A stretch of 64,000 nt of DNA, from the NCBI RefSeq assembly GCF_006345805.1, contig NC_042997.1:15748001-15812000 (forward strand), written 5' to 3'. Below, piece after piece: positions 576 to 62,587 of this stretch. A model generated the notes under the pieces. That model was not told where the DNA came from. It did no database searches and saw only the letters and a program-made list of their open reading frames with translations. The DNA is from Octopus sinensis (Eukaryota). Within the stretch, counting starts at the first letter, position 1. Each line of letters opens with the position of its first letter. The translations under genes were made by a program, and so were the position numbers.

Positions 576-1382
576 GATGATGTTAAAAGCTAGTTGGAAA
601 GAGTAAAGACTGATGTAGTAGCAGTGGAAAAGACGGGATAATGAGACAGGGAGTTGATGATGATTACTTTCGAATTTTATTTCATTTTATGTAACAATTG
701 TTATATACAGTTGATAACTTCACAAGCTCTGTGGTATGCTGTATTCTTCAAATGGAGAATTTATTGCCCAATTTACTCAATCAGAGGGTTTATGTATCAG
801 TCGCAAAAATGGCAAAACAGATATTGTAAATATTTCGTTTTTGGATTTGGCTTGCAAGATTCTTTATGTGAGTTCGTGTGTTGAAGCATATTCTGTTGTG
901 TCCGGGGAGAGTCATTTTCTTTTTGTGCCTTATAGTCAAGACTATTGAAAAGGTTGCAAGATGCAACGAAAATTTTTAGGAAAATAAAAATAAGAAATAA
1001 GTAAAAAATTTTACCGGTGAGTATGTTAAATTAAAAGGCACAAAAAGAAAATGACTCTCCCCAGACACAACAGATATTGTAAAATTATGCTGAAAACATC
1101 TTCGAATGTTAAAGTTAGAAGCTATTTTATTGGAATATTATAATTTAGTCCTATAACTTTTGGGTGGTTATTATTATATTTTGATATATATTTAGTGCAT
1201 ATTTAAATTATTACACACAGGCACACATACATACATACACATTCTCTCTCTCTCTCTTTCTCTCTGTCACATACACACACACATACATACACACACACAT
1301 CGTATACTCGTCAATTGAAGCTTTCTTCATCCTATTTCTTTCTTTTTCCCTGTGCATCCTTTTTATATTCAACACGCTTTCA

Positions 1383-1740
1383 CTTCTTCCTCTCCTTCTT
1401 CTTCTTCTTCTTCTTCTTCTTCTTCTTCTTCTTCTTCTTCTTCTCTTCTTCTCCTTCTTCTTCTCCTTCTTCTTCTCCTTCTTCTCTTCTTCTTTCTTCT
1501 TCTTCTTCTCTTCTTCTTCTTCTTCTTCTTCGACTGCTTCTCTTTCTTCTTCTTCTTCTTCTTCTTCTCTTCTTCTTCTCCTCCTCCTCCTACTCCTCCT
1601 CCTTGTTGTTGTTGTTGTTCTTCTTCTTCTTCTCCTCCTCCTTCTTCTTCTTCTTCTTCTCCTCCTCCTCCTCCTCCCCTTCTTCTTCTCCTCCTCCTCC
1701 TCCTCCTCCTCCTTCTTCTTCTTCTTCTTCTTCTTCTTCC
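1383..1740. repeat. (TTC/CTC)n compound trinucleotide tract
   Basis: Direct reading; source of the poly-S/L/F and poly-E/R/K ORFs. Confidence 0.95.
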
Positions 1741-1769: not shown

Positions 1770-1895
1770 TTCATTTTATTTCTAATAATCATTTTAATTT
1801 CTTTCAATAGTTAATTAAATGTTAACGTTTAATACATTGGATAGCATTTAAAAAAAAACTGACGAGAAGAAATTACCCGGTAACGAAGAAGCAAT
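1770..1895 (+). repeat. Left arm of ~125-bp inverted repeat flanking the 18S fragment
   Basis: TTCATTTTATTTCTAATAATC...GGTAACGAAGAAGCAAT is the near-perfect reverse complement of 2118-2242. Confidence 0.95.
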
Positions 1896-1907
1896 ATTCG
1901 TCGGTGA

Positions 1908-2097
1908 TACCTGGTTGATCCTGCCAGTAGTCATATGCTTGTCTCAAAGCTTAAGCCATGCAAGTGTAAGTTCATGCCGTAAACGAATGGTGAAACCGCG
2001 AATGGCTCAGGAACCGGACCTAATCCTCGGGACCGTATTCTTCCACCGCGAGGAGAGTGGATAACTGTGGCAATTCTAGAGCTAATACATGCAACCG
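1908..2097 (+). rRNA. 18S rRNA: 18S rRNA 5' fragment (pseudogenic, ~190 bp)
   Basis: Starts with the universal TACCTGGTTGATCCTGCCAGTAGTCATATGCTTGTCTCAAAG and contains GCGAATGGCTC and GGATAACTGTGGCAATTCTAGAGCTAATACATGC; homology stops near 2100. Confidence 0.95.
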
Positions 2098-2117
2098 AAG
2101 CCGCGATCGCTTCTTCG

Positions 2118-2242
2118 ATTGCTTCTTCGTTACCGGGTAATTTCTTCTCGTCAGTTATTTTTAAATGCTATCCAATGTATTAAACGTTAACATTTAATTA
2201 ACTATTGAAAGAAATTAAAATGATTATTAGAAATAAAATGAA
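2118..2242 (-). repeat. Right arm of inverted repeat flanking the 18S fragment
   Basis: Reverse complement of 1770-1895. Confidence 0.95.
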
Positions 2243-2613
2243 TAATATTCTTTTAATTACATTCGACGAATTTCTTAGATTGTTAATCCTTACTGAATTA
2301 ACCACGATAGCATTTACTTAACCTTTGCTTTTCTTACCGACTGCGCCATCGTTTTATTTAGTCTCTTGAAGTTTCTATTTTCTGTACCAACCAATATACA
2401 CGCTTCTATATCTATGTATTTTAATGATTCTTTCATCACTACTTCGACATTTACGGCAAAGATTATGCTCCGCTTATGACGTCAGTGGGATAGAAATATG
2501 TCTGGAGTTGTCTCCCGTACTCGAAAAACTAATTAAAGCCACATAATTCATTAATTAATGCTGTTTCTCTTTCTCCTCGCAACATATTCGATCTGACTAG
2601 CTTTTTAATGCTT

Positions 2614-2662: not shown

Positions 2663-4604
2663 CGAGCCGTAACACTGCTGAAGAAAGATCTAAACAAGGG
2701 AAATGTAATAGATAACTTTAGGCCCATCACTCTGCTTAATGCAGACTTGAAAATTTTGGCCAAGGTGCTAGCCAAGAGGTTGGCGCTTGTCATCGAGAAA
2801 CTGGTCGACAAGGCGCAAACATGCGCCGTGCCAGGCCGGACCATCCATGACAACCTCCATCTGATGCGCTACATCATAGACAGGGTAGTTAACGAACCTG
2901 GCATGGGTGGGGCCCTGATCAACTTGGATCAATCGAAAGCCTTTGATAGGGTAGACCATCGATACTTGGAGGCAGTCCTGAGAGCGGCTGGTTTCGGTCC
3001 CGTCTTCCGCGGCTGGATAGCTGCCTTGTACAGAGGCATCCGTTCGGTAATTCGCGTAAATGGACATCTATCGAGACCTTTCGACATTGCACGTTCGGTC
3101 CGTCAGGGATGCCCCCTCTCGGCGCTTCTATACGTATTGACTCTTGAGCCACTACTGCGGAAGCTGGCGACTCTAAGGGGCATCCCGCGAGAATTGGGAT
3201 GCGGGACGAGCGTGTCTGCATACGCGGACGACGTCACCGTCATAGTGTCTAGCCACGAGCACATCGAGCTGGTCGGCGAGACACTGAAAAACTACGAAGC
3301 GGTGACAGGAGCGAAAATCAACCGGAAAAGTCAGTGGGCTTGCGACTAGGCACCTGGAGAAGCAAGCCCATGCCGTCCACCAGCGCCTCCGTCGTGGGAC
3401 GCTGGACCGACGGCCCGGTTGAGTTGCTCGGGGTCTGGTTTGGTCCGGACCTCCAAGTGGAGAAGAACTGGAACGAGATAACGAGTAGGGTGGTCACTCT
3501 CGCCCGGCAATGGGCCGAGAGGAAACTGTCCCTAAAAGGTCGAGCGCAGGTGGCGAACACGTACATCGCGTCCGTCATCTACTACCGCCTGACCGTCGTA
3601 CCTTGTCCCGACCCTACCATCACCAAACTACAACGCATCCTCTTTCGCTTCTTGTGGAAAGGATGCGTCCCGATGGTCAGGCGATCCATTTGCTGTCAAC
3701 ACCCGTTAAAAGGAGGGCTGGGCATGCCGTGGTTGATGATGCGCAGACACGCGCTGAGACTGCGACATCTCTGGCTCTATGTAGACGACGGTGAACAGGT
3801 GTGGTCGCCGTTTGTGAGGCACGCTTTCCCGCAGCTCGTCTCCATGACCGAACTGCAGTCGTGGATCAAAAAGAGGCCGAGGAAGGGCGAATGGCACCGC
3901 GAGTGTCGCGTTGCTCTCAAGCAACTCTGCCGTCCTGGGTCGACCTTAAGTGACTTCAACACAACCAAAGCATTCTATAGGGGTTTAGTGGAGGGGAGGT
4001 ACGACGACGAGCTCGGGGCGAACCTGGACGTCGACGAGGAGTACCTGACCCGCCTGTTCGGGACGACTTTCGGGCCAGGGCCCATGGACAACTTCCAGAG
4101 ATCCCTGGCCTGGCAGTGCTACCGAGAAGCGCTACCCGTTCGGGATAAGCTCTACAGACACGGCTCGAGAAACACGGGGCCGACCTGCCCGAGATGCGGT
4201 CAGAGCGACGAAACCGTTCTGCACGCACTCGTTCAGTGTCCAACAATTTCCGACCTGTGGGCTTATGTCGAACAACTGCTGTCACGTGTGGGACGAGTCG
4301 GTTTATCAGCTGAGTCTATCGTCAATATTGTCACGCCTCCTTCCTTCAAACGGGAAGGAAGAGCTATTTTCATCATCCTTGTGGCTATGGCGAAAGAATG
4401 TATCTGGTGGACGCGTCTGAAAGGATTGGAGACAAACACTTTCCTCTCTGGTCAATCTCTCATCAACTTCTTCAAGTACCACTTGAAAAGGAAATGAGAG
4501 TAGAGAGGCAAGTTTTGTCTAGCGAATGTTTTAAAAAAAGATGGGTGAATGTAGCAAGAATGGCACGTATGAATGACGAAGCCACCTTGAGCATAGTCCT
4601 ATGA
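2663..4604 (+). pseudogene. Tx1 ORF2: reverse transcriptase plus C-terminal zinc-binding (zf-RVT-like) domain, two 1-bp frameshifts
   Basis: FRPITLLNADLKILAKVLAKRL, PGRTIHDN, LDQSKAFDRVDH, VRQGCPLS, AYADDVTV, GGLGMP, CPRCGQSDETVLHALVQCP. Frames switch at ~3323-3329 and ~4492-4494; the C-terminus continues MRVERQVL...SIVL to the stop at 4604. Confidence 0.92.
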
Positions 4605-4996
4605 ACCCAGAAATCGAAAACAGAGAGTTGCTTATTTGCAAAAAAAAAAAAAAAAAAAGAAATATAAAATGTGACTTCATTGACCGAGGTTACCGTGGTC
4701 TTTTCCGCAGGCTTTTCTTTCCACGGGTAAACCTCACCTGTCCTCCCCTTTACACTTCATATTGACATTTCTGTGATAACGATCCCTATTGATCATTTTT
4801 TTTCCTCCCCCCCCCTTTTTTTTTTTTTTAACCCCCCTTATTTTTGTCCTCTTTCTCTCCTTTTACGATCCCTTTTGATCGAACCTCCCCCTTCCCTTTT
4901 TTTTTTTTTTTTTTTTTTCTAATACCTTCAAAAGAAAAGCTCTACCTTGTAATTTGTTCTATCTGTGTGCAGCCCTGTGTGGCTAATAAAGAAACA
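2663..4996 (+). mobile_element. 5'-truncated Tx1/L1-clade non-LTR retrotransposon
   Basis: RT ORF remnant plus ~390-bp 3' UTR with A- and T-rich tracts, ending GGCTAATAAAGAAACA directly before (TATC)n. Confidence 0.92.
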
Positions 4997-5292: not shown

Positions 5293-5492
5293 TAGCAGAA
5301 ATGTTAGCATACTGGGCGAAATACTTAGCGGTATTTCGTCTGTCTTTACGTTTTGAGTTCAAATTCCGCCGAGGTCGACTTTGCTTTTCATCCTTTTAGG
5401 GTCGAAAATTAAGTACCAGTTGCGTACTGGGGTCGATCTAATCGACTGGCCCCCTCCCCCAAAATTTCGGGCCTTGAGCCTAGAGTAGAGAA
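5293..5492 (+). mobile_element. SINE-B (tail type 2)
   Basis: B-box GAGTTCAAATTC, core GTCGACTTTGC.TTTCATCC, tail CCCCTCCCCCAAAATTTCGGGCCTTG. Confidence 0.85.
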
Positions 5493-9758: not shown

Positions 9759-10160
9759 GGCGGCGAATTTAGCAAAATCGTTAGCACACTGGGCAAAATG
9801 CTTAGCGGTATTTCGTCCGCCGTTACGTTCTGAGTTCAAATTCCGCCGAGGTCGACCTTGCCTTTCATCCTTTCGGGGTCGATTAAATAAGTACCAGCTA
9901 CGCACTGGGGTCGATGTAATCGACTTAATGCGTTTGTCTGTCCTTGTTTTTCCTCTCTGTATTCAGCCCCTTATGGATAGTAAAGAAATAGGTATTTCGT
10001 CCGCCGCTACGTTCTGAGTTCAAATTCCTCCGGGTTCGACTTTGCTTTTCATCCTTTCGGGGTCGATAGATTAAGTACCATCGAAACACTGGGGTTGATG
10101 TAATCGACTAGTCCCCTCCACTAAATTTCGGGCCTTGTGCCTTTAGTAGAAAGGATTATT
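9759..10160 (+). mobile_element. SINE-B dimer (core+tail 1, then core+tail 2)
   Basis: Two cores; second unit starts at GGTATTTCGTCCGCCG (~9990), duplicating 9807-9822. Confidence 0.85.
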
Positions 10161-21987: not shown

Positions 21988-22391
21988 TGACAAATCAGTA
22001 CGGAACGACTTACACCTTATAATATATATTTTTCACCTTTTCAAGAACATGGATTCTATTGAATGTATATAGCATGGACTCTATTGAATGTATGTAACAA
22101 TTATGAACTGTTCCATTATACTTTTTATGTATATAGCATGACTCTATTGAATGTATGAAACAATATGAACTATTCCATTATAATCTTTATTATAAAAAAA
22201 TTCTTTTTGATAAGGTTCGTTACTTCAAGAACCGAAACATGTAAAAATTAAATTTATCTAATATAGTGGCATTTTCAAACTCTTTTTTACAAATATATAT
22301 AATATATATATATATATTCATATAATACACATAGATATACATGTGTGTGTATGTGTGTGTATATACACACACACACACATACACACACGTG

Positions 22392-22459
<68 letters not shown>

Positions 22460-27483: not shown

Positions 27484-28065
27484 GCGGCGAGCTGGCAGAA
27501 ACGTTAGCACGCCGGGCGAAATGCGTAGCCATATTTCGTCTGCCGTTACGTTGTGAGTTCAAATTCCGCCGAGGTCGACTTTGCCTTTCATCCTTTCGGG
27601 GTCGATAAATTAAGTACCAGTTACGCACTGGGGTCGATGTAATCGACTTAATACCTATGTCTGTCCTTGTTTGTCCCCTCTGTGTTTAGCCCCTTGTGGG
27701 TAATAAAGAAATAGGTATTGCGTCTGTCTTTACGTTCAGAGTTCAAATTCCGCCGAGGTCGACTTTGCCTTTCATCCTTTCGGGGTCGATAAATTAAGTA
27801 CCAGTTACGCACTGGGGTCGATGTAATCGACTTAATACCTATGTCTGTCCTTGTTTGTCCCCTCTGTGTTTAGCCCCTTGTGGGTAATAAAGAAATAGGT
27901 ATTGCGTCTGTCTTTACGTTCAGAGTTCAAATTCCGCCGAGGACGACTTTGCCTTTCATCCTTTCGGGGTCGATAAATTAAGTACCAGTTGCGCGCTGGA
28001 GTCGATCTAATCAACTGGCCCCCTCCCCGAAAATTTCGGGCCTTGTGCCTATAGTAGAAAAGAAT
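27484..28065 (+). mobile_element. SINE-B trimer (184-bp period), ending in tail 2
   Basis: GGTATTGCGTCTG junctions at 27714 and 27898. Confidence 0.9.
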
Positions 28066-30189: not shown

Positions 30190-30372
30190 TATGTGTATGT
30201 ATGTATGTATGTATGTATGTATGTATGTATGTATGTATGTATGTATGTATGTATGTATGTATGTGTGTATGTATGTATATTGTGTATGTATGTATGTATG
30301 TATGTATGTATGTATGTGTGTATCTATGTATGTGTGTGTGTATATATGCATGTATGTATGTATATATGTATG

Positions 30373-30404
<32 letters not shown>

Positions 30405-30930
30405 CATGTATGTACACTTGCGTCAGAAATAATTAGCACTTCTCAATTTCTACATTAATAGGTTAAATCAATTAACCTATGAGCTGTTCAAAACGTCTAC
30501 GCGATGAGAAAACTTAGTATGGTGTGATTTCGGTCCTTGCGAGGCGCTACCTACATCTATTAAACAAAGGAAGTTTGTCTGCATCCGCACTCCAAGTTGT
30601 TGTTGCACTGCTATGTCACATCATAAGGCTGTAGACTCTCAAACTGCTCTGCAACAAAGTTACGTCATCGTTCTGCGCAACAGTGAACTGCAACAAAGCA
30701 ATAGTTCGAGATATGGCCACTGGTGACAGCACATACCTTGAGTGAAGAGCAATCAAGGTGCTAATTAATTTCTGACGGTAGGTATGTATGTATGCATGTA
30801 TGTATGATGTATGTTATGTATCTATGTAGGTATGTGTGTATGTATGCATGCATGTATGTATGCATGCATGTATGTATGTATGTATGTATGTATGTATGTA
30901 TGTATGCATGTATGTATGTATGCATGTATG

Positions 30931-30962
<32 letters not shown>

Positions 30963-31192
30963 CATGTATGTATGTATGTATGTGTGTATCTATGTATGTA
31001 TGTGTGTGTATGTATACATGTATGTATGTATGTATGTATGTATGTGTGTATGTATGTATGTATGCATGCATGTATGTATGTATGTATGTATGTATGTGTG
31101 TATGTATGTATGTATGTATGTATGTATGTGTGTATGTATGTATGTATGTATGTATGTGTGTATGTATGTATGCATGTATGTATGCATGTATG

Positions 31193-31226
<34 letters not shown>

Positions 31227-31495
31227 TGCATGTATGTATGTATGTATGTATGTATCTATGTATGTATGTGTGTGTGTATGTATACATGTATGTATGTATG
31301 TATGTATGTATGTATGTATGTGTGTATGTATGTATGTATGTATGTATGTATGTGTGTATGTATGTATGTATGTATGTATATATGTATGTATGTATGTATG
31401 TATCTATGTATGTATGTATGTGTGTATGTATGTATGTATGTATGTATGTATGTATGTATGTATGTATGTATGTATGTATGTGTGTATGTATGTAA
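30190..31495. repeat. Large (TATG)n array interrupted by a MITE
   Basis: Direct reading; source of the MYVC/HTYI ORFs. Confidence 0.95.
30415..30783. mobile_element. Tc1/mariner-type MITE inside (TATG)n
   Basis: TA|CACTTGCGTCAGAAATAATTAGCAC left and GTGCTAATTAATTTCTGACGGTAG right are imperfect inverted repeats. Confidence 0.65.
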
Positions 31496-33113
31496 TAGGG
31501 AACAGGTTTCCTTTGATACGTATTTAAAATATGAGTTTTTATATATTTTTTTATTAATACGCATTTTTTGTTATTTTACAATCTTTTTCAGCAATAAAAT
31601 TCATAAATCTATCATCAACATTTATAAATACCTAAAAAAAAAAAAATCGTTGATGAGGCATTTAAGAACTTTACTGATCTGAACAAACTACAGAGAATTC
31701 ATATGGGGGGTGGGGAATAAAAAAAAGAAGAAGAAAAAACTTCTATAGAACAAAAATAAAAGTAGAACTCGTGTTTCCAATACAACACACACTCGCGACT
31801 CGCACGCACATGCACACACATACACACACACACACGCACACATAGACATACACACACAAATGTACGCGCGCACACACATAAAAGCGTGTGTGTGTGTGTG
31901 TGCGTTTGTGAGCCTTTCCTTACAAATCTGTGGTCTAGTGCAAATCAATAGAAAAATATATATATATATATACATTCAATGACCTTCAGTTTATCAAGTT
32001 GATAGCCGAGAGAAAGAACTGATAGAGGTATCACGTGTATGATGAGTGTATATGTAAGAATCCGTAAGTGTAAGAATGTGCTTGTGTGTTTTTCACCGTC
32101 GTCTATGATAGTGTATTTATGTAGACTTAAATGTGGCGGCGTGTTTGCTTATACTTGGTGGAGATTTGTCAATATTTGTACATTTCTGTAGCTTTAAAAG
32201 TATGTCTGTATACGTGTATAGATGTGTGTTGCATTCTGCGTGTGTGTGTGTGTGAATTGTCAATATTTGTCCGGGATTTTTTTTTTTTTGTAGTTTTGAA
32301 AGTATGTATGCGTATAAAATTATTAAAAAATGTTAATGATTCTGTAACTATGTGATATATATATTCCATTTGCTGCCATAGGTATGAGGCATCCTGCATA
32401 CATACAAATATGTACGCCATATATGCTTTTTTGTATGTATAATTGAGAATATTGCAGATCTTATATTTGTATACGTAGCAGCAAATATATACACGTATAA
32501 GCGTGAATATAAGTGTCTGTGATAGAAAGGAAGGCAAATTACTATAAAATTATATTATGAAAACGGCGACTTTCTATTAAGATAGCGACTTTTGATTAAA
32601 ACTCGTTAGTAACTTGGAGTGTTGAGTCCGATCTTACTTGAGGACGTTGAGAAATGAGTCCATTACAGTAAGACTGAGGTTATAAGTATAAACTGTGTTA
32701 CGGCTTGCGTGTGCAGTGTCATCCGTTTCCAGGGGGAGTATCAAACTTTACGGAACAATTCGAGTGAGAATAAGGAAGAAGGCAGAGATAGAGAAAGAGA
32801 GGGAAAGGGAATCATGTCTTCCAGGGAGGAACAAACTGTAGTGAAAAAATTTCAGAAACGGTCGACACTTTATCTTGCAAGTCATTCAATAATCTATCGA
32901 CTACGCCAGCTGGAATTGCGGTTGACACACTGTGCATGTTCTACATAGATGTAATCAGAAAGCAAGTAGAATGTTACTAAATCATTCGAATAGAAAGACA
33001 AAAAAAACAAAACAAAAACATCAAATATCAGAAGTCAATTGACTTTATCACTTCACACGTCTTCAGTTCTAGAATTTGATGCATTTGTTAATTATTGCAA
33101 ATTTTATGGTATA

Positions 33114-45821: not shown

Positions 45822-46858
45822 GGATACCCAAACTGAACAACCCGAGGGAAGTACGGCAATTATTGTTGCAAAGAAGGTGAAAATGATGGCAATGAAAAAA
45901 GCGCACGAGCAATTCGCTGATAGGTGGGAGGAGAAACCTCTGCACGGCAATATGTGACCCGCAGCAAACAAGCTGATGTTGACCAGAAGCAAACCCATCA
46001 GTGGCTGCGGAGCTCACTAAAAAAAGCAGAGAGCGAAGGTTTCATCCTGGCTGCTCAAGACCAAAGCCTATTAACCCGGAACTACCAGGCCAATGTGATG
46101 AAAAAATGGAGCAGACCCAAAATGCCGATTCTGCAACGACATGATTGAAACAGTGACCACCTAATCTCTCTGATGTAAGTCTTAGCACCAGTGGAGTATA
46201 AATTAAGACATGACAGAGTTGGCCAATATCTCCACTGGCTAATAAGTCGGCATTACAATATCAAAACTGCCGACAAGTGGTATAATCACCACCCTGAGCT
46301 GTAACTGAAGGAGAAAATGTAACCATTCTGTGGGACTTTCCAGTACATACAGACCGAACCATCAAGGCCAATAAACCAGATATTGTTGTGAAAGACCAAA
46401 ACAATAAGTTTGCTTATTGATCGACATGAGCATCCCCTGTGATCATAATATCTCAGCGAAAGAGTTTGACAAGCTCAGAAAATATAAAGACCTACTCATT
46501 GAAATTGAGAAAATGTGGCATCTCAAGGCGGTTACAATACTAGTGATCGTAGGAGCACTAGGAATGATCAAGAAGGGAACCGAAAATTATATGAGAATGA
46601 TCCCTGGCTTACCATCCCTGCAAGAAGTGCAAAAGATTGTCTTAACTGGTACATCACACGTATTGAGAAGAGCATTGTCGATGTGAGAACTGTTGCTGCT
46701 CATGTATTTAATTTAACTTTAAAAAAAAAAAAAAAAAAATGAACGAACTACTGAGTTTGGTTTAATGGCCTACCAATATACACTATGATTTTCTTTGCCC
46801 TAGGAGTCGGGAAGACACTCGCAAGAAATGGAAGAAAATTTGAAAGAAGAAAAAAAAA
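45821..46858 (+). mobile_element. 5'-truncated R4/Dong-like LINE (CCHC knuckle and PD-(D/E)xK restriction-like endonuclease), flanked by (TAA)n
   Basis: EKPLHG, AESEGFILAAQDQSLLTRNY, CRFC...H...C, RHDRVGQYLHW, LWDFPVHTDRTIKANKPDIVVKD, LIDMSIP, KEFDKLRKYKDL, LRRALSM* (stop 46686); several 1-bp frameshifts. Confidence 0.9.
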
Positions 46859-46892
46859 AGTATAATAATAATAATAATAAATAAAATAATAA

Positions 46893-47450
46893 TGCCCTGA
46901 TGCAGTACCAGGCAGTGGCTCTCATGGCTTCTGATCTTAACTGATTGGAAGTGTTATCATGTACATTGTTTTGTCTTGGTATAAAAGATGGGCTACAGCA
47001 AATAATTCTCTGCTCATACCACAGATTTGCTTGTCAGTTGTTTGACCTTAACCAGTTGAGCATGTCCCTTAGTGGCTGACGATATGTGCATCTCTGATCA
47101 CGAGCAGAAGTAGTGGGGGAGCATCATAGCCATGTGTTGAGAGGGATTCTTTGGGTTTGAATAGCTCACCTCTGGAAACATGGGTGGTTCTTTCAACATC
47201 CTTAAGCAACCCTTATTCAGGGACCGTTTGAGTGGGATGGGCTACTCAACCTGAAGAAAATTCTAACTGGGCCCCACCTGCAAGGTCATGTGCTGTTTAT
47301 CTTGATATGAGATCACCATGTCGCGCACATATGGTTGTGATGCATGTGCCTCTGTGTACCTTTATCAGACGGGTAGTCATGATGGGTATATTGGGCTTCG
47401 TATATTTTTTACCCCAGTGTCACTTTGATGGCATGACTGCTCTCTCACTC
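46893..47450. repeat. Unclassified ~560-bp repeat between (TAA)n tracts (second copy 50543-51094)
   Basis: Higher-GC block bounded by (TAA)n; class not recognised. Confidence 0.6.
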
Positions 47451-48776
47451 ATAATAATAATAATAATATATAATATGAAAATAATAATATACCACCAGTA
47501 TTATCACTTCCAGTAACATCATCATCACCACCATTACCATCTCTCCTACACTTGAAAAATCATAACATACAAACAGCATTAAATAATGAATCATGAGACT
47601 TCAATTATTTTCGAGTACGGGAGACAACTCTGGACATATTTCTGTCTCATTGACTTCATCAGCGGAGCATAATCTTTGCCGTAAATATCGAAGTAGTGAT
47701 GAAAGAATCATTAAAATACATAGATATAGAAGTGTGTATATTGGTTGGTACAGAGAATAAAAACTTCAAGAGACTAAATAAAACGATGACGCAGTCGGTA
47801 AGAAAAGCAAAGGTTAAGTAAATGCTATCGTGGTTAATTCAGTAAGGATTAACAATCTAAGAAATTCGTCGAATGTAATTAAAAGAATATTATTCATTTG
47901 ACTAATATTGCTTCTTCGTTACCGGGTAATTTCTTCTCGTCAGTTTGTTTTAAATGCTATCCAATGTATTAAGTGTTAATATTTTAATTAACTATTGAAA
48001 GAAATTAAAATGATTATTAGAAATAAAATGAAATTTAACAAACATTATTGAGATTTAGGAGAGAGAAGAGAAAAGAAGAAGAAGAAGAAGAAAGAAGAAG
48101 AGAAGAAAAAGAAGAAGAAGAAGGAGGAGGAGAAGAAGAAGAAGAAGAAGAAAAAGAAGAGGAGGAGGGAAAAAAGAGGAGAGAGAGGAAGAAGAGACGA
48201 AGAAGAAGACGAGAGAAGAGGGAGAGGAGAAGAGAACGAAGAAGAAGAAGAAGAAGAAGAAGAAGAAGAAGAAATCAAAACGTGTTAAATTATAAAAAAA
48301 GATATAAGGAATAGAAAGATGTAAGATGAAGAATGCTTGACTTGACTATACAATATGTGAGAGAAAGTGTGTGTGTGTGTGTGTATGAGTGTTTGAGAAT
48401 GTGTATGTATTATGAGTATGAGAGTGCGTGTGAGAGAACAAGAAACTCAAAATGAAATATACCGGACATCCTATATGGTGTATAATCGGATATTGTAATG
48501 GTGTACTATTTGCTCTTAAATCTTTTGATTGGTTGGTTACTTTACATGTAAGAAAGTTTGTTTGGGGCAACACGAACAGACCGGAGTTAATACAAAAACA
48601 ACGGCAGTTTTCTTATCATTGCTGTTATAGCATCTTCTTGATTAACACTCCCAAGTGATGGAGCATCTAAGGGTAACTCTGCCTGCTGGAAACAGCATGT
48701 AATTTCCATCAAATTACAACTTACTGTCTTGAAAATGGTCAGAATACTGTAAAGTGTGTGTTCTAAATACACTATA

Positions 48777-48937
48777 GGCGTAGGAGTGGCTGTGTGGTAA
48801 GTAGCTTGCTTGCCAACCACATGTTCCGGTTCAGTCCCACTGCGTGGCACCTTGAGCGAATATCTTCTACTATAGCCTCGGCCGACCAAAGCCTTTGGTA
48901 TGGATTTGGTAGACGGAACTGAAAGAAGCCCGTCGTA

Positions 48938-48972
<35 letters not shown>
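48777..48972 (+). mobile_element. SINE-A 5' half (duplicated copy)
   Basis: Ends in (TA)n at the array. Confidence 0.85.
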
Positions 48973-48974
<2 letters not shown>

Positions 48975-48975
<1 letters not shown>

Positions 48976-49941
48976 ATCAATATAGGGTGCAAAAAATTTT
49001 TGTAGAATTTTTTGCCACCAGCGGCCTAGTGGGAAAAAATTAAATAGTCATAGACCATTTTTAAGTTCAACATCAACAATCAAGGAACGGCCATAATAGG
49101 CCATTCACCCACTAGAAATAACAGCCAAAGCTTCACCGCAAATAAAAATCAATTCCGGTAAACCAGGAGAAAATTTAAAAAACATTTACCCTGTAATTTC
49201 TTATACGATGCACCGTTTCATCTGCTGTTTAATGGTAAACTAACCTGATTAAATTAAATCAAGCCAATCTTCCATAGGCCCTCAGATCTTCTTAGTAGAA
49301 ATAGCCAAGTCGGACAGATATTTTCACGAGGCATTTCCAACCCTGCCAAGGCATATCTGACCTAAATTTTCAAATCATCGCACTCGCGCCAATTTATCGG
49401 CAGCAAATAAATAAGCCGTCGATTCCATACGGAATTAACCAGAAAATTCATAATTAATCAATAGGGTGGCAAAAAATTTTTGTAGAATTTTTTGCCACCA
49501 GCGGCCTAGTGGGAAAAATTAAATAGTCATAGACCATTTTTAAGTTCAACATCAACAATCAAGGAACGGCCATAATAGGCCATTCACCCTAAAATAAAGC
49601 CAAAGCTTCAACCGCAAATAAAAATCAATTCCGTAAACCAGGAAAATTTAAAAAACATTTACCCTTTAATTTCTTATACGATGCACCGTTTCATCTGCTG
49701 TTTAATGTAAACTAACCTGATTAAATTAAATGGAATCGACGCTTATATTTATTGCTGGCCGATAAATTTGGCGCGAGTGCGATGATTTGAAATTTTAGGT
49801 CAGATATTGCCTTGGCAGGGTCGGAAATGCCTCGTGAAAATATCTGTTCCGACTTGGCTATTTCTTACTGAAGAATCTGAGGGCCTATGGAAGATTGGCT
49901 TGATTTAATTTAATCAGGTTAGTTTACCATTAAACAGCAGA
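48975..49941 (+). repeat. ~481-bp tandem unit x1.6 plus inverted segment
   Basis: Unit starts 48975 and 49456; inversion from ~49731. Confidence 0.9.
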
Positions 49942-52415
49942 TGTAACTGAAGGAGAAAATGTAACCATTCTGTGGCACTTTCCAGTACATACAGACCGAA
50001 CCATCAAGGCCAATAAACCAGATATTGTTGTGAAAGACCAAAACAATAAAGTTTGCTTATTGATCGACATGAGCATCCCCTGTGATCATAATATCTCAGC
50101 GAAAGAGTTTGACAAGCTCAGAAAATATAAAGACCTACTCATTGAAATTGAGAAAATGTGGCATCTCAAGGCGGTTACAATACTAGTGATCGTAGGAGCA
50201 CTAGGAATGATCAAGAAGGGAACCGAAAATTATATGAGAATGATCCCTGGCTTACCATCCCTGCAAGAATGCAAAAGATGTCTTAACTGGTACATCACAC
50301 GTATTGAGAAGAGCATTGTCGATGTGAGAACTGTTGCTGCTCATGTATTTTAATTTAACTTTAAAAAAAAAAAAAAAAATGAACGAACTACTGAGTTTGG
50401 TTTAATGGCCTACCAATACACTATGAGTTTCTTTGCCCTAGGAGTCGGGAAGACACTCGGCAAGAAATGGAAGAAAATTTGAAAGAAGAAAAAAAAAAGT
50501 AATAATATAATAATAATAATAATATAATAATAATAATAATAATGCCCTGATGCAGTACCAGGCAGTGGCTCTCATGGCTTCTGATCTTAACTGATTGGAA
50601 GTGTTATCATGTACATTGTTTGGTCTTGGTATAAAAGATGGGCTACAGCAAATATTCTGCTCAATACCACAGATTTGCTTGTCAGTTGTTTGACCTTAAC
50701 CAGTTGAGCATGTCCCTTAGTGGCTGACGATATGTGCATCTCTGATCACGAGCAGAAGTAGTGGGGAGCATCATAGCCATGTGTTGAGAGGGATTCTTTG
50801 GGGTTTGAATAGTTCACCTCTGGAAACATGGGTGGTTCTTTCAACATCCTTAAGCACCCTTATTCAGGGACCGTTTTGAGTGATGGGCTACTCAACCTGA
50901 AGAAAATTCTAACTGGGCCCCACCTGCAAGGTCATGTGCTGTTTATCTTGATATGAGATCACCATGTCGCGCACATATGGTTGTGATGCATGTGCCTGGT
51001 GTACCTTTATCAGACGGGTAGTCATGATGGGTATATTGGGCTTCGTATATTTTACCCCAGTGTCACTTTGATGGCATGAACTGCTCTCTCACTCAATAAT
51101 AATAATAATAATAATAATAATGAAAATAATAATAATACCACCAGTATTATCACTTCCAGTAACATCATCATCACCACCATTACCATCTCTCCTACAACTT
51201 GAAAAATCATAACATACAAACAGCATTAAATAATGAATCATGAGACTTCAATTATTTTGTCGAGTACGGGAGACAACTCTGGACATATTTCTGTCTCATT
51301 GACTTCATCAGCGGAGCATAATCTTTGCCGTAAATATCGAAGTAGTGATGAAAGAATCATTAAAATACATAGATATAGAAGTGTGTATATTGGTTGGTAC
51401 AGAGAATAGAAACTTCAAGAGACTAAATAAAACGATGACGCAGTCGGTAAGAAAAGCAAAGGTTAAGTAAATGCTATCGTGGTTAATTCAGTAAGGATTA
51501 ACAATCTAAGAAATTCGTCGAATGTAATTAAAAAATATTATTCATTTGACTAATATTGCTTCTCTTCTTCGTTACCGGGTATTTTCTTCTCGTCAGTTTG
51601 TTTTAAATGCTATCCAATGTATTAAGTGTTAATATTTTAATTAACTATTGAAAGAAATTAAAATGATTATTAGAAATAAAATGAAATGTTAACAAACATT
51701 TATTGAGATTTAGGAGGAGGAGAAGAAGAAGAAGAAGAAGAAGAAGAAGAAGAAGAAGGAGGAGAAGAAGAAGAAGAAGAAGAAGAAGAGGAGGAAGAAG
51801 AAGAAGAGGAGGAGGAGGAGGAAGAAGAAGACGAAGAAGAAGACGAAGAAGAAGAGGAGGAGGAAGAAGAAGACGAAGAAGAAGAAGAAGAAGAAGAAGA
51901 AGAAGAAGAAATCAAAACGTGTTAAATTATAAAAAAAGATATAAGGAATAGAAAGATGTAAGATGAAGAATGCTTGACTTGACTATACAATATGTGAGAG
52001 AAAGTGTGTGTGTGTGTGTGTATGAGTGTTTGAGAATGTGTATGTATTATGAGTATGAGAGTGCGTGTGAGAGAACAAGAAACTCAAAATGAATATACCG
52101 GACATCCTATATGGTGTATAATCGGATATTGTAATGGTGTACTATTTGCTCTTAAAATCTTTTGATTGGTTGGTTACTTTACATGTAAGAAAGTTTGTTT
52201 GGGGCAAACACGAACAGACCGGAGTTAATACAAAAACAACGGCAGTTTTCTTATCATTGCTGTTATAGCATCTTCTTGATTAACACTCCCAAGTGATGGA
52301 GCATCTAAGGGGTAACTCTGCCTGCTGGAAACAGCAATGTAATTTCCATCAAATTACAACTTACTGTCTTGAAAATGGTCAGAATAATGTAAAGTGTGGT
52401 TCTAAATACACTATA

Positions 52416-52608
52416 GGCGTAGGAGTGGCTGTGTGGTAAGTAGCTTGCTTGCCAACCACATGGTTCCGGGTTCAGTCCCACTGCGTGGCACCTTGAGCAA
52501 ATATCTTCTACTATAGCCTCGGGCCGACCAAAGCCTTGTGAGTGGATTTGGTAGACGGAAACTGAAAGAAGCCCGTCGTATATATGTATATATAATATAT
52601 ATATATTT
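52416..52608 (+). mobile_element. SINE-A 5' half
   Basis: Continues after the array at 54710. Confidence 0.88.
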
Positions 52609-54707
52609 AATCAATATAGGGTGGCAAAAAAATTTTGTAGAATTTTTTTGCCACCAGCGGCGGCTAGTGGGAAAAAATTAAATAGTCATAGACCATTTTT
52701 AAGTTCAACATCAACAATCAAGGAACGGCCATAATAGGCCATTCACACCACTAAAATAACAGCCAAAGCTTCAACCGCAAATAAAAATCAATTCCGTAAC
52801 CAGGAGAAAATTTAAAAAACATTTACCCTGTAATTTCTATACGATGCACCGTTTCATCTGCTGTTTAATGGTAAACTAACCTGATTAAATTAAATCAAGC
52901 CAATCTTCCATAGGCCCTCAGATTCTTCAGTAAGAAATAGCCAGTCGGAACAGATGTTTCACGAGGCATTTCCGACCCTGCCAAGGCAATATCTGACCTA
53001 AAATTTTCAAATCATCGCACTCGCGCCAATTTATCGGCAGCAAATAAATATAAGCCGTCGATTCCATTACGGAATTAACCAGAAAATTCATAATTAATCA
53101 ATATAGGGTGGCAAAAAAATTTTGTAGAATTTTTTTGCCACCAGCGGCCTAGTGGGAAAAATTAAATAGTCATAGACCATTTTTAAGTTCAACATCAACA
53201 ATCAAGGAACGGCCATAATAGGCCATTCACCCACTAGAAATAACAGCCAAAGCTTCAACCGCAATAAAAATCAATTCCGTAAACCAGGAGAAAATTTAAA
53301 AAACATTTACCCTGTAATTTCTTATACGATGCACCGTTTCATCTGCTGTTTAATGGTAACTAACCTGATTAAATTAAATCAAGCCAATCTTCCATAGGCC
53401 CTCAGATTCTTCAGTAAGAAATAGCCATCGGAACAGATATTTTCACGAGGCATTTCCGACCCTGCCAAGGCAATATCTGACCTAAAATTTTCAAATCATC
53501 GCACTCGCGCCAAATTTATCGGCAGCAAATAAATATAAGCCGTCGATTCCATTACGGAATTAACCAGAAAATTCATAATTAATCATATAGGGTGGCAAAA
53601 AAATTTTGTAGAATTTTTTTGCCACCAGCGGCCTAGTGGGAAAAAATTAAATAGTCATAGACCATTTTTAAGTTCAACATCAACAATCAAGGAACGGCCA
53701 TAATAGGCCATTCACCCACTAGAAATAACAGCCAAAGCTTCAACCGCAATAAAAATCAATTCCGTAAACCCAGGAAAAATTTAAAAAACATTTACCCTGT
53801 AATTTCTTATACGATGTCCGTTTCATCTGCTTTTTAATGGTAAACTAACCTGATTAAATTAAATCAAGCCAATCTTCCATAGGCCCTCAGATTCTTCAGT
53901 ACGAAATGCCAAGTCGGAACAGATATTTTCACGATGCATTTCCGACCCTGCCAAGGCAATATCTGACCTAAATTTCAAATCATCGCACTCGGCCAATTTT
54001 ATATCGCAGCAAATAAATATAAGCCGTCGATTCCATTACGGAATTAACCAGAAAATTCATAATTAATCAATATAGGGTGGCAAAAAAATTTTGTAGAATT
54101 TTTTTGCCACCACGGTTTAGTGGGAAAAAATTAAATAGTCATGACCATTTTTAAGTTCAATATCACATCAAGGAAGGCCATAATAGGCCATTCACCCCCT
54201 AGAATAACAGCCAAAGCTCAATCAACCGCAAATAAAAATCAATTCCGTAAACCAGGAGAAAATTTAAAAAACATTTACCCTGTAATTTCTTATACGATGC
54301 ACCGTTTCATCTGCTGTTTAATGGTAAACTAACCTGATTAAATTAAATGGAATCGACGGCTTATATTTATTTGCTGCCGATAAATTTGGCGCGAGTGCGA
54401 TGATTTGAAAATTTTAGGTCAGATATTGCCTTGGCAGGGTCGGAAATGCCTCGTGAAAATATCTGTTCCGACTTGGCTATTTCTTACTGAAGAATCTGAG
54501 GGCCTATGGAAGATTGGCTTGATTTAATTTAATCAGGTTAGTTTACCATTAAACAGCAGATGAAACGGTGCATCGTATAAGAAATTACAGGGTAAATGTT
54601 TTTTAAATTTTCTCCTGGTTTACGGAATTGATTTTTATTTGCGGTTGAAGCTTTGGCTGTTATTTCTAGTGGGTGAATGGCCTATTATGGCCGTTCCTTG
54701 ATTGTTG

Positions 54708-54709
<2 letters not shown>
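52609..54709 (+). repeat. ~484-bp tandem array (3.6 units) plus terminal inverted segment
   Basis: Unit starts 52609, 53096, 53581, 54065; inverted part 54348-54709; each unit opens with a 15-bp-stem hairpin. Confidence 0.92.
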
Positions 54710-59311: not shown

Positions 59312-59730
59312 TTTTCTACGCCAGGCACAAAACCCGAAATTTTGGGGGAGGGGGCCAGTCGATTAGATCAACCCCAGTACGCAACTGGTACTTAATTTAT
59401 TGATCCCGAAAGGATTAAAGGCAAAGTCGACCTCGGCGGAATTTGAAGTCAAAACATAAAGACAGACGAAATACTGCTAAGCATTTCGCCCGGCGTGCTA
59501 ACGTTTCTTATTTCTTTATTGCCCACAAGGGGCTAAACATAGAGGGGACAAACAAGGACAGATAAACGGATTAAGTCGATTACATCGACCCCAGTGCGTA
59601 AGTGGTACTTAATTTATCGACCCCGAAAGGATGAAAGGCAAAGTCGGCCTCGACGGAATTTGAACTCAGAACATAAAGACAGACGAAATCCTGCTAAGCA
59701 TTTCGCCCGGCGTGCTAACGTTCTGCCGCC
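59312..59730 (-). mobile_element. SINE-B dimer (tail 1 unit joined to tail 2 unit)
   Basis: Two cores; junction near 59505. Confidence 0.85.
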
Positions 59731-59949: not shown

Positions 59950-60358
59950 ATCCTTTCTATGACAGGCACACGGCCTGAAACTTTAGGGAAGGGGGCTAAT
60001 CGATTTCATCGGTCCCAGTGCGTGACTGGTGGCGAGCTGGCAGAAACGTTAGCACGCCGGATGAAATGCTTAGCAGTATTTCGTCTGTCGTTACGTTGTG
60101 AGTTCAAATTCCGCCGAGGTTGACTTTGCCTTTCATCCTTTCGGGGTCGATAAATTAAGTACCAGTTCCGCACTGAGGACGATGTAATCGACTTAATACC
60201 TATGTCTGTCCTTGTTTGTCCCCTCTATGTTTAGCCCCTAGTGGGTAATAAAGAAATAGGTACTTATTTCATTGACACCCCACCTCAGAACGTAAGGAGG
60301 AACGAAATGCCGCTAAGCATTTGATTGGGTGTGCTAACGATTCTGCTAGTTCGCCGCG
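59950..60358. mobile_element. Plus-strand SINE-B (60030-60258) inserted into a minus-strand SINE-B
   Basis: Host reads GACTGGT | insert | GGTACTTATTTC. Confidence 0.8.
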
Positions 60359-62487: not shown

Positions 62488-62587
62488 NNNNNNNNNNNNN
62501 NNNNNNNNNNNNNNNNNNNNNNNNNNNNNNNNNNNNNNNNNNNNNNNNNNNNNNNNNNNNNNNNNNNNNNNNNNNNNNNNNNNNNNN
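62488..62587. other. Assembly gap (100 N)
   Basis: Direct reading. Confidence 1.

What the first reader, a model, noticed from the sequence alone, without database searches (positions are those of the whole stretch)
1770..2242. 18S rRNA 5' fragment held in the loop of a ~125-bp inverted repeat
Seen: the first ~190 nt of an 18S gene (1908-~2097) lie between near-perfect inverted arms (1770-1895 and 2118-2242), so a transcript would fold into a long stem with rRNA in the loop. The right inner junction has a short duplication (GCTTCTTCG ATT GCTTCTTCG), suggesting a microhomology template switch. Nine extra bases (CGTCGGTGA) precede the mature 18S start. Inference: either a foldback/MITE-like cassette that captured rDNA, or a one-off repair product. 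If CGTCGGTGA is the real 5' ETS end, capture came from rDNA or pre-rRNA rather than mature rRNA.
Basis: partly seen in the sequence, partly recalled or inferred. Interest (0 to 1): 0.72.

Follow-up and report, generated by a model that had tools for sequence, protein, structure and literature searches.

The report
18S patch plus snap-back repair scar
In what looks like an octopus genome, one copy of an ordinary repeat carries a 333-bp scar from a single DNA-break repair: the first ~210 bases of 18S rRNA followed by a backwards copy of the neighbouring 126 bases. It is a neat natural example of a known repair error, not a mobile element or a gene.

Summary
Arms 1770-1895 and 2118-2242 are 124/126 complementary. 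Between them, 1908-2117 matches the first ~202 positions of eukaryotic 18S rRNA (E=2.5e-36).

The decisive evidence is elsewhere in the window. The left arm and both outer flanks belong to a ~740-bp repeat with two uninterrupted copies (47571-48274 and 51218-51911). These serve as empty sites and define a clean 333-bp insertion (1903-2235), with no target loss, no target-site duplication and no poly(A).

The right arm carries all five variants private to the left arm, so it was copied from it. The outer junction uses a 7-nt microhomology (AAATGAA). The supposed GCTTCTTCG duplication is not one: the first copy is the 3' half of a conserved 18S hairpin. The pair is therefore a pre-existing 9-nt donor/flank complementarity (40 of 20,000 shuffles). 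Of the nine "extra" bases, four match the target, so only GGTGA is orphan.

Best reading: a one-off break-repair product that combines an rRNA/rDNA-templated patch with a local foldback copy. Both processes are known. The MITE/foldback-cassette reading is rejected. Whether the donor was RNA or DNA stays open because native octopod rDNA could not be retrieved. Interest is modest.

The parts
1383..1739 (+). (CTT)n microsatellite that forms the left part of repeat copy A. The equivalent (GAA)n tracts lie in copies B and C.
   Evidence: TRF: period 3, 120 copies. BLAST homology of A to B/C runs through it.
1770..1895 (+). Left arm: the original flank sequence, part of the ~740-bp repeat, and the template for the right arm.
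   Evidence: Present in the same context in copies B and C. Homology continues on both sides of it, so it is not an element terminus.
1884..1892 (+). CGAAGAAGC in the left arm, complementary to 18S GCTTCTTCG (2109-2117). This is the likely nucleation site for the template switch.
   Evidence: the 9-nt complementarity between flank and donor end was reached by 40 of 20,000 shuffles.
1896..1902 (+). ATTCGTC: the last target bases before the break, matching ATTAGTC in B and C with one SNP at 1899.
   Evidence: homology of A to B/C runs to 1902. B 47900 and 47899 abut.
1903..1907 (+). GGTGA: five orphan bases at the target/18S junction. They are either the 5' ETS end or non-templated/filler bases.
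   Evidence: They match neither the empty site nor the SSU model. The only near match is GGTGAAACC at 1989-1997 inside the piece, which is not significant.
1908..2117 (+). 18S rRNA 5' piece, SSU model positions 1 to ~202, sense orientation.
   Evidence: Rfam RF01960: 126.6 bits, E=2.5e-36, begins at model position 1.
2011..2058 (+). GC-rich stretch within the 18S piece that departs from the near-universal AUUAAAUCAGUUAU block.
   Evidence: alignments. No exact match in the metagenome or genome collections. Unexplained.
2096..2117 (+). Conserved SSU hairpin CGAAG-CC-GC-GAUC-GC-UU-CUUCG. Its 3' half is the first GCTTCTTCG.
   Evidence: The MFE structure has the same 5-2-2-loop-2-2-5 architecture as the Rfam consensus at this position.
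2118..2242 (-). Right arm: a newly made inverted copy of 1770-1895.
   Evidence: 124/126 complementary. It shares all 5 copy-A-private variants with the left arm and none of the B/C states.
2236..2242 (+). AAATGAA: a 7-nt microhomology shared by the outer end of the right arm and the resumed target sequence.
   Evidence: homology to B/C restarts at 2236 while the arm ends at 2242.
2243..2566 (+). Right flank of repeat copy A, contiguous with the left arm in copies B and C.
   Evidence: 94.3% identity to B and C; 17-19 mismatches in 324.
47571..48274 (-). Repeat copy B: an uninterrupted empty site between 47899 and 47900.
51218..51911 (-). Repeat copy C: an uninterrupted empty site between 51547 and 51548, with its own small slippage variant GAAGAAGAGAAGC.

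Best explanation
This is a single, lineage-specific 333-bp insertion (1903-2235) in one copy of a ~740-bp dispersed repeat. It arose when a chromosome break or stalled fork between C1902 and the base now at 2236 was healed by error-prone, synthesis-dependent repair with serial template switches.

Shown:
- The site was originally continuous, as in copies B and C.
- The insertion consists of 5 orphan bases, ~210 nt of the 5' end of 18S rRNA in sense orientation, and an inverted copy of the 126 bp lying immediately left of the break.
- The inverted copy was made from this locus itself.
- Rejoining used a 7-nt microhomology, with no loss or duplication of target bases.

Inferred order: a free 3' end acquired the 18S-derived stretch, either by copying rDNA/rRNA or by capture of a cDNA/DNA fragment. 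The 9-nt complementarity between 18S GCUUCUUCG and flank CGAAGAAGC brought donor and flank together. Synthesis then continued along the flank as a snap-back, primed from ATT:AAT next to that 9-mer. The new strand unwound at AAATGAA and annealed to the other broken end. The mirror-image order, starting from the right-hand end, fits the sequence equally well.

The structure has no demonstrated function. A transcript through it would form a 126-bp stem.
For: - Empty sites: A matches B and C up to 1902 and again from 2236, and the two match points abut in B (47900|47899) and C (51548|51547).
- Source of the right arm: it shares 5 of 5 private variants with the left arm versus B/C.
- Relative age: the arms differ at 2 of 126 positions, while A versus B/C flanks differ by 17-19 of 324. 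The event therefore postdates the split of the copies.
- Donor identity: Rfam SSU, model positions 1-207, E=2.5e-36.
- Junction homologies: 7 nt at the outer junction. A 9-nt offset complementarity sits at the inner junction, reached by 40 of 20,000 shuffles.
- The first GCTTCTTCG is the 3' strand of a conserved SSU hairpin.
- No poly(A) and no TSD.
- Known precedents: local foldback inversions of 2 to ~150 bp at breaks, and complex insertions mixing donors (PMC11724301). Class 2 templated insertions have microhomology and non-templated bases and lack TSD and poly(A) (PMC5110952).
Against: - No reads are available, so the structure is not independently verified.
- Only two independent lineages exist (A versus the B/C ancestor), so polarity rests on parsimony and on the arm-variant argument.
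- The terminal microhomology at the inner junction is at most 3 nt, and only if native 18S continues with ATT. The 9-mer is out of register, so the exact priming step is not explained.
- The 48-nt stretch 2011-2058 departs from a near-universal 18S block, so the donor may not have been the functional 18S.
- The origin of GGTGA is unknown.
Confidence: 0.72

Rival explanations
1. The event had the same architecture, but the 18S stretch was reverse-transcribed from mature 18S rRNA by a LINE reverse transcriptase or a repair polymerase with RT activity. The growing strand copied the flank, jumped onto rRNA at the hairpin near nucleotide 200, ran off the 5' end of the RNA, added about 5 non-templated bases (GGTGA on the top strand), and was end-joined. 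This is a variant of the best explanation rather than an alternative to it. It differs only in the nature of the donor and the direction of synthesis.
For: - The piece begins at SSU model position 1. My rough estimate, not a computation: a randomly placed endpoint in an rDNA unit of several kilobases would land within a few bases of a mature rRNA end about 1-2% of the time.
- rRNA is the most abundant cellular RNA, and its GCUUCUUCG can pair with the flank CGAAGAAGC.
- The genome encodes LINE reverse transcriptases, with one truncated copy 430 bp away.
- RNA-derived class 2 patches with non-templated bases are described (PMC5110952). Retrotranscribed telomerase RNA at break sites is described too (PMC8537989, abstract).
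Against: - It requires the right-hand 3' end to invade duplex or sister DNA at a 7-nt microhomology to copy the flank first.
- GGTGA could simply be the ETS end, which would exclude mature rRNA.
- No direct evidence of an RNA intermediate is possible from the sequence alone.
Confidence: 0.3
2. The structure is an assembly or library artefact, for example a chimeric molecule or read made by template switching during amplification or library preparation and carried into the consensus.
For: - Strand-displacing or chimeric library molecules can produce inverted junctions with microhomology (general knowledge).
- rRNA/rDNA is an abundant contaminant.
- The only arm differences lie in a homopolymer run, a typical site of sequencing error.
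- The assembly is scaffolded, with a 100-N gap at 62488-62587.
Against: - The sequence returns exactly to the expected flank after 126 nt, with no target loss.
- There is no adapter-like sequence at the centre.
- All three junctions look like genuine repair junctions.
- A consensus assembly normally needs several concordant reads.
Confidence: 0.1
3. It is a mobile foldback or MITE-like element whose terminal inverted repeats carry an rDNA cargo.
For: Long near-perfect inverted arms surround a cargo, and the arm sequence occurs four times in the window.
Against: - The two other arm copies are solo, without a partner arm or cargo.
- Homology between copies runs through both ends of the left arm, so the arm is not a terminus.
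- There is no target-site duplication.
- The right arm carries the private variants of its own left arm. That fits local copying, not transposition of a family member.
Confidence: 0.02
4. It is a LINE-mediated chimeric retrocopy made by target-primed reverse transcription at an endonuclease nick (class 1 type).
For: - The bottom strand at the site reads ...TTCATTT/GACT, loosely like the T-rich/purine nick sites of L1-type endonucleases (and general knowledge).
- LINEs are present and presumably were active in this genome.
Against: - No target-site duplication and no poly(A) tail.
- The 3' part of the insert is an inverted copy of the adjacent flank, not a LINE or mRNA 3' end.
- The nearby LINE (2666-4660) is separated from the insert by 324 bp of original flank plus a microsatellite, so it is a separate event.
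Confidence: 0.04
5. The inverted-repeat-plus-18S structure is ancestral to the repeat family and was precisely deleted in the B/C lineage.
For: Long palindromic structures are deletion-prone (general knowledge). B and C represent only one independent lineage, since they lie in a 3.64-kb tandem duplication.
Against: - The arms are about 4-fold more similar to each other than A is to B/C, and the right arm mirrors all five A-private variants.
- The required deletion would have no flanking direct repeat, yet would have to leave an exact junction.
Confidence: 0.03

Closest known systems
Local foldback (snap-back) inversions at double-strand breaks, with microhomology-primed synthesis and end-joining capture of the second end (yeast Break-Ins data, PMC11724301). 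Related: SD-MMEJ / polymerase-theta templated insertions (PMC2943611 and PMC5728401 were listed but not read).
   Same: - An inverted copy of the sequence immediately next to the break.
- Arm length of 126 bp, within the reported 2 to ~150 bp range.
- Microhomology where the new strand is captured by the other end (7 nt here).
- The spacer becomes the loop.
   Different: - The loop here is not local sequence but ~215 nt brought from rDNA/rRNA.
- Terminal priming homology at the inner junction is at most 3 nt, with a 9-nt homology offset by 3 nt.
- This is a fixed or germline event in an animal genome, not an induced break, and the enzymes involved are unknown.
Class 2 templated sequence insertions / TSIPs (Onozawa and Aplan, PMC5110952)
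   Same: - A patch of a few hundred bases templated from a distant, highly expressed locus and inserted at a break.
- No TSD and no poly(A).
- Microhomology and a few possibly non-templated bases at the junctions.
   Different: - rRNA is not mentioned in that review (0 occurrences).
- This insertion is compound: a distant patch plus a local inverted copy.
- An RNA origin is not shown here.
MMBIR / FoSTeS complex rearrangements (as described in the introduction of PMC11724301)
   Same: Serial low-processivity template switches at microhomologies that give mixed-origin, partly inverted insertions.
   Different: The scale is far smaller (333 bp rather than kilobases to megabases), and there is no copy-number change of a larger segment.
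Dispersed rDNA-like fragments / rRNA pseudogenes (human, PMC5381670)
   Same: A fragment of the rRNA-specifying region lying outside the rDNA array.
   Different: [quoted passage not shown]
- This piece starts at 18S nucleotide 1 and has resolvable junctions.
MITEs and Foldback transposons
   Same: Long inverted arms around a middle segment.
   Different: No TSD, the arms are not element termini, there are no other paired copies, and the right arm is a local copy.

Membership tests
MITE / Foldback transposable element | The inverted repeats are the termini of the element, so homology between copies ends at the outer arm ends. | tested here: not met
   Homology of copy A to B/C continues leftwards from 1770 into 1743-1769 and the microsatellite. 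Past the inner end it continues to 1902.
MITE / Foldback transposable element | Target-site duplication flanking the element. | tested here: not met
   The flanks are AACGT|arm and arm|TAATA. Relative to the empty sites, no target base is duplicated.
MITE / Foldback transposable element | Multiple copies carrying both arms. | tested here: not met
   Within the 64-kb window there are four arm copies: one pair plus two solo arms in B and C. A genome-wide test was not possible with these tools.
Local foldback inversion at a DNA break | The inverted copy is of the sequence directly adjacent to the break and is templated from the same locus. | tested here: met
   The arm lies 7 nt from the breakpoint. 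The right arm shares 5 of 5 private variants with the left arm.
Local foldback inversion at a DNA break | Microhomology at the priming junction and at capture by the second end. | tested here: inconclusive
   Capture junction: 7 nt (AAATGAA), a clear match. Priming junction: 0-3 nt terminal homology, depending on the unknown native 18S, plus a 9-nt complementarity offset by 3 nt.
Local foldback inversion at a DNA break | Size within the documented range. | tested here: met
   126 bp, against 2 to ~150 bp reported (PMC11724301).
Class 2 templated sequence insertion | Inserted sequence templated from a distant locus. | tested here: met
   1908-2117 is the 18S rRNA 5' end. No other rRNA sequence is in the window.
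Class 2 templated sequence insertion | No TSD, no poly(A), and end-joining features at the junctions. | tested here: met
   a clean insertion, 7-nt microhomology, 5 orphan bases.
Class 2 templated sequence insertion | The patch derives from RNA by reverse transcription. | not testable with these tools
   This needs the native 5' ETS/18S junction. All routes to native octopod rDNA returned nothing.
LINE-mediated (TPRT) chimeric retrocopy / class 1 insertion | TSD of at least 5 bp and a 3' poly(A). | tested here: not met
   Neither is present.
LINE-mediated (TPRT) chimeric retrocopy / class 1 insertion | Insertion at a TTTT/A-like endonuclease site. | tested here: inconclusive
   The bottom strand reads CATTT/GACT at the break, which is only loosely similar.
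Functional 18S rRNA gene / rDNA unit | Full-length SSU within an rDNA unit. | tested here: not met
   Only model positions 1 to ~202 of 1831 are present. There is no further rRNA match in 64 kb.

The most novel reading that the evidence does not exclude
The patch was reverse-transcribed directly from mature 18S rRNA during germline break repair. A 9-nt rRNA:DNA pairing recruited the most abundant cellular RNA to a resected end. A reverse transcriptase (LINE-encoded, or a repair polymerase with RT activity) ran off the rRNA 5' end and added five non-templated bases. Such a locus would be a natural, junction-resolved record of RNA-templated break repair in a cephalopod. The resulting 126-bp hairpin could also be a substrate for dsRNA pathways, including the A-to-I editing that is extensive in coleoids.
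Probability: 0.3. Interest if true: 0.5.

Novelty: new member of a known kind. Interest (0 to 1): 0.3.

Why it matters
The window contains its own controls: two uninterrupted copies of the same repeat. All three junctions of a compound repair event can therefore be read base by base, which is rare for natural structural variants.

The case shows a distant rRNA-derived patch and a local snap-back copy made in one event. A 9-nt donor/flank complementarity probably chose the donor.

For annotation, the lesson is practical. This is neither an rRNA gene nor a transposon, and the standard Rfam gathering scan missed it. If the species' ETS does not end in GGTGA, the locus becomes evidence for rRNA-templated repair in an animal germline, which would be of real interest to the DNA-repair field. 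Otherwise it is a tidy but ordinary repair scar.

Tried and rejected
1. Reaching native octopod rDNA to read the ETS/18S junction and 18S positions ~100-220. Every route returned nothing:
- Exact scan for the unusual 25-mer in metagenome contigs and genome contigs.
- A tolerant gapped 18S pattern in metagenome contigs.
- The 3' end of the piece in genome contigs.
- Sequence strings in paper full text.
- Spurious-ORF searches with the sense frame and the antisense frame.

JGI sample 3300037598 and ENA ERZ4233750 do hold cephalopod-type LINE fragments, but no matching rDNA was found.

2. My first idea for the inner junction was a hairpin GCGATCG/CGATTGC that would extend the 18S piece to 2122 with a 5-nt microhomology. 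I dropped it once the fold and the Rfam consensus architecture agreed on CGAAG...CUUCG ending at 2117.

3. A local template for GGTGA. The only near match is GGTGAAACC at 1989-1997 (8 of 9 bases). About ten equally good 8-of-9 matches occur elsewhere in the window, so it is not significant.

4. A link to the neighbouring 5'-truncated LINE, as a chimera or 5' transduction. Rejected: 324 bp of original flank and a (CTAT)n tract separate them.

5. Resemblance of ATTCGTCG to the polylinker of a classical universal 18S primer, recalled from memory. Rejected as coincidence: seven of those bases are the target sequence, and the 18S start here is TACCTGG with GGTGA before it, which does not match that primer.

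6. The sub-threshold Rfam miRNA hits (mir-297, mir-466 and others) all fall on CA/TA microsatellites and were ignored.

Full report
**What is there**

- Arms 1770-1895 and 2118-2242 are reverse complements at 124 of 126 positions. The two differences both lie in one A-run.
- As a single strand, 1760-2252 folds into one long stem of -243 kcal/mol, against -101 +/- 6 for shuffles (z = -23.6).
- Between the arms, the Rfam eukaryotic SSU model aligns from its position 1 at base 1908. It scores 104.7 bits (E=4e-29) in context and 126.6 bits (E=2.5e-36, model 1-207) when the stretch is trimmed to 1903-2125.
- The default gathering scan of the whole window did not report this match. A permissive whole-window scan found no other rRNA-derived sequence.

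**The key context: empty sites in the same window**

A self-comparison showed that the arm is not unique. It occurs again at 47907-48032 and 51564-51685. The similarity extends well beyond it. Copy A (1493-2566) matches copy B (47571-48274) and copy C (51218-51911) in inverted orientation. The match runs through the (CTT)n tract, the arm, and 324 bp to the right of the structure.

B and C sit in the two units of a 3.64-kb tandem duplication that are 95% identical, so they count as one independent lineage. In both, the left arm is followed directly by ATTAGTC AAATGAA TAATATTC..., with no second arm and no 18S.

The match of A to B/C runs up to base 1902 and restarts at 2236. The two match points abut in B (47900|47899) and in C (51548|51547). 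Copy A therefore carries a clean insertion of 333 bp (1903-2235). There is no loss or duplication of target bases and no poly(A).

**Anatomy of the insertion**

From left to right:
- 1896-1902, ATTCGTC. This is target sequence, ATTAGTC in B/C, with one SNP.
- 1903-1907, GGTGA. These five bases match neither the target nor the SSU model.
- 1908-2117, 18S positions 1 to ~202.
- 2118-2242, the inverted copy of 1770-1895. Its last seven bases (AAATGAA, 2236-2242) are at the same time the first seven bases of the resumed target.

The right arm shares all five variants that distinguish the left arm of copy A from B and C. It was therefore copied from this locus or its sister chromatid, not from another family member.

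The arms differ at 2 of 126 positions, whereas the flanks of A differ from B/C at 17-19 of 324. On a rough clock, the event falls in the most recent 15-30% of the time since the copies split.

**The inner junction**

However, 2096-2117 reads CGAAG-CC-GC-GAUC-GC-UU-CUUCG. It folds into a 5 bp / 2-nt bulge / 2 bp / loop / 2 bp / 2-nt bulge / 5 bp hairpin. The Rfam SSU consensus shows the same architecture immediately after ACAUGCAA.

The first GCTTCTTCG (2109-2117) is therefore native 18S. The second (2121-2129) is the complement of CGAAGAAGC in the left arm (1884-1892). What looks like a duplication is a pre-existing 9-nt complementarity between donor and flank, lying 3 nt out of register with the actual join.

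A 9-nt match between the 33-nt flank and the 31-nt donor end was reached by only 40 of 20,000 composition-preserving shuffles. It probably guided the template switch. Whether the three bases ATT (2118-2120) are also shared with native 18S is unknown.

**Organism and neighbours**

The window is a repeat-rich eukaryotic genome with 39.6% G+C, many microsatellites and one 100-N gap.

A 5'-truncated, frameshifted non-LTR retrotransposon lies at about 2666-4660 on the + strand, ending in a poly(A) tract at 4640-4658. Its reverse-transcriptase ORF has these best named relatives:
- Argonauta hians, 63% identity.
- An Octopus bimaculoides protein, 97% identity over 36 residues.

The source is therefore most likely an octopod. 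The LINE is separated from the structure by the original flank and a (CTAT)n tract, so it is a separate insertion.

**Mechanism**

The anatomy fits a compound of two known break-repair outcomes.
- Local foldback inversions at breaks range from 2 to ~150 bp. They are primed at microhomology and captured by the other end. They have been documented in yeast, together with complex insertions that combine several donors (PMC11724301).
- Class 2 templated sequence insertions lack TSD and poly(A). They show microhomology and non-templated bases at their junctions, and are thought to be patches derived from RNA (PMC5110952).

I infer the following sequence of events. A 3' end at the break acquired the 18S stretch. 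The 9-nt complementarity brought the 18S stretch and the flank together. Synthesis then ran 126 nt along the flank. Finally, the new strand annealed to the other end through AAATGAA.

The mirror-image order fits the sequence equally well. In that order the right end copies the flank first, jumps to 18S, runs to its 5' end, and is end-joined to the left end. The two orders differ in the donor they need:
- The first order needs the antisense rDNA strand as template, or capture of a DNA fragment.
- The second order can use rRNA itself.

The piece starts at 18S nucleotide 1. A random endpoint in an rDNA unit would land that close to a mature end only about 1-2% of the time (my estimate). This favours an RNA end, unless GGTGA turns out to be the ETS end.

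**What could not be settled**

- Two metagenome scans.
- Two genome-collection scans.
- A search for sequence strings in paper full text.
- Two searches for spurious ORFs across the 18S piece.

Three things stay open as a result: the origin of GGTGA, the ATT microhomology, and the status of 2011-2058. That 48-nt, 58% G+C stretch replaces the near-universal AUUAAAUCAGUUAU block. No reads are available, so an assembly artefact cannot be excluded. The exact return to the flank and the repair-like junctions argue against one.

**Rejected readings**

- A MITE or foldback element. The arm is not a terminus, there is no TSD, the other arm copies are solo, and the right arm is a local copy.
- A TPRT chimera. 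There is no TSD and no poly(A).
- An ancestral structure deleted in B/C. This is contradicted by the arm-variant pattern.

Inverted repeats as such are common in this window. One example is an older foldback-type junction in a 485-bp satellite, present in both 3.64-kb units. The cargo and the readable junctions are what make this case stand out, not the hairpin.

**Verdict**

This is a real, well-defined, one-off repair scar of a known kind, made unusually readable by its in-window controls. Interest is modest. It would rise if the ETS comparison shows that mature rRNA was the template.

Noticed in passing
window 2666-4660 (+): A 5'-truncated non-LTR retrotransposon with RVT_1 and zf-RVT domains in its relatives. 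There is a frameshift near 3325-3349 between two ORFs (2747-3349 and 3334-4497), and a poly(A) tract at 4640-4658. Best named relatives are from Argonauta hians and Octopus bimaculoides, which identifies the window as octopod.
   Followed up: partly
window 46297-49731 and 49939-53379: A 3.64-kb tandem (segmental) duplication, 95% identical, that contains repeat copies B and C.
   Followed up: partly
window 48969-49947 and 52603-54709: A ~485-bp satellite array that flips orientation at 49729-49731 and 54346-54348 (unit position 290 joined to inverted position 464, with a 3-nt overlap). This gives a perfect 127-nt inverted repeat with a 173-nt spacer at 54222-54648. It is an older foldback-type inverted duplication shared by both 3.64-kb units.
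   Followed up: partly
window 2011-2058: Within the 18S piece, a 48-nt, 58% G+C stretch replaces the almost universally conserved AUUAAAUCAGUUAU region, while the flanking 18S blocks are near-consensus. It may be a peculiarity of cephalopod 18S or a sign that the donor was a divergent rDNA paralogue.
   Followed up: partly
window 892-934 / 1032-1074: Another short hairpin-forming inverted repeat: 43-nt arms, 95% complementary, 97-nt spacer. Its nature is unknown.
   Followed up: no
window 5295-5447 and more than 20 other sites (e.g. 9770-9925, 27495-27648, 59574-59726, 60040-60193): A ~155-bp dispersed repeat family, probably a SINE, at 76-92% identity. Opposed copies create long inverted repeats such as 59509-59722 / 60045-60258.
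   Followed up: no
window 51556-51570: Copy C has its own small slippage variant at the inner end of the arm (GAAGAAGAGAAGC instead of GAAGAAGC). This shows that the GAA-rich motif is slippage-prone.
   Followed up: no
window 22338-22412, 30229-31494 and other sites: Many sub-threshold Rfam hits to mir-297, mir-466, mir-3149 and mir-1277 fall on CA/TA-type microsatellites and are composition artefacts. The long ORFs at 30761-31682 on both strands lie in the same low-complexity tract.
   Followed up: no
window 1908-2117 (method note): The Rfam gathering-threshold scan of the whole 64-kb window reported nothing. The same 18S fragment scores 105-127 bits, against a gathering score of 50, when a short stretch is searched. 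Truncated rRNA fragments can evidently be lost to the speed filters.
   Followed up: yes
window 62488-62587: A run of 100 N marks a scaffold gap, so the source is a scaffolded assembly.
   Followed up: no
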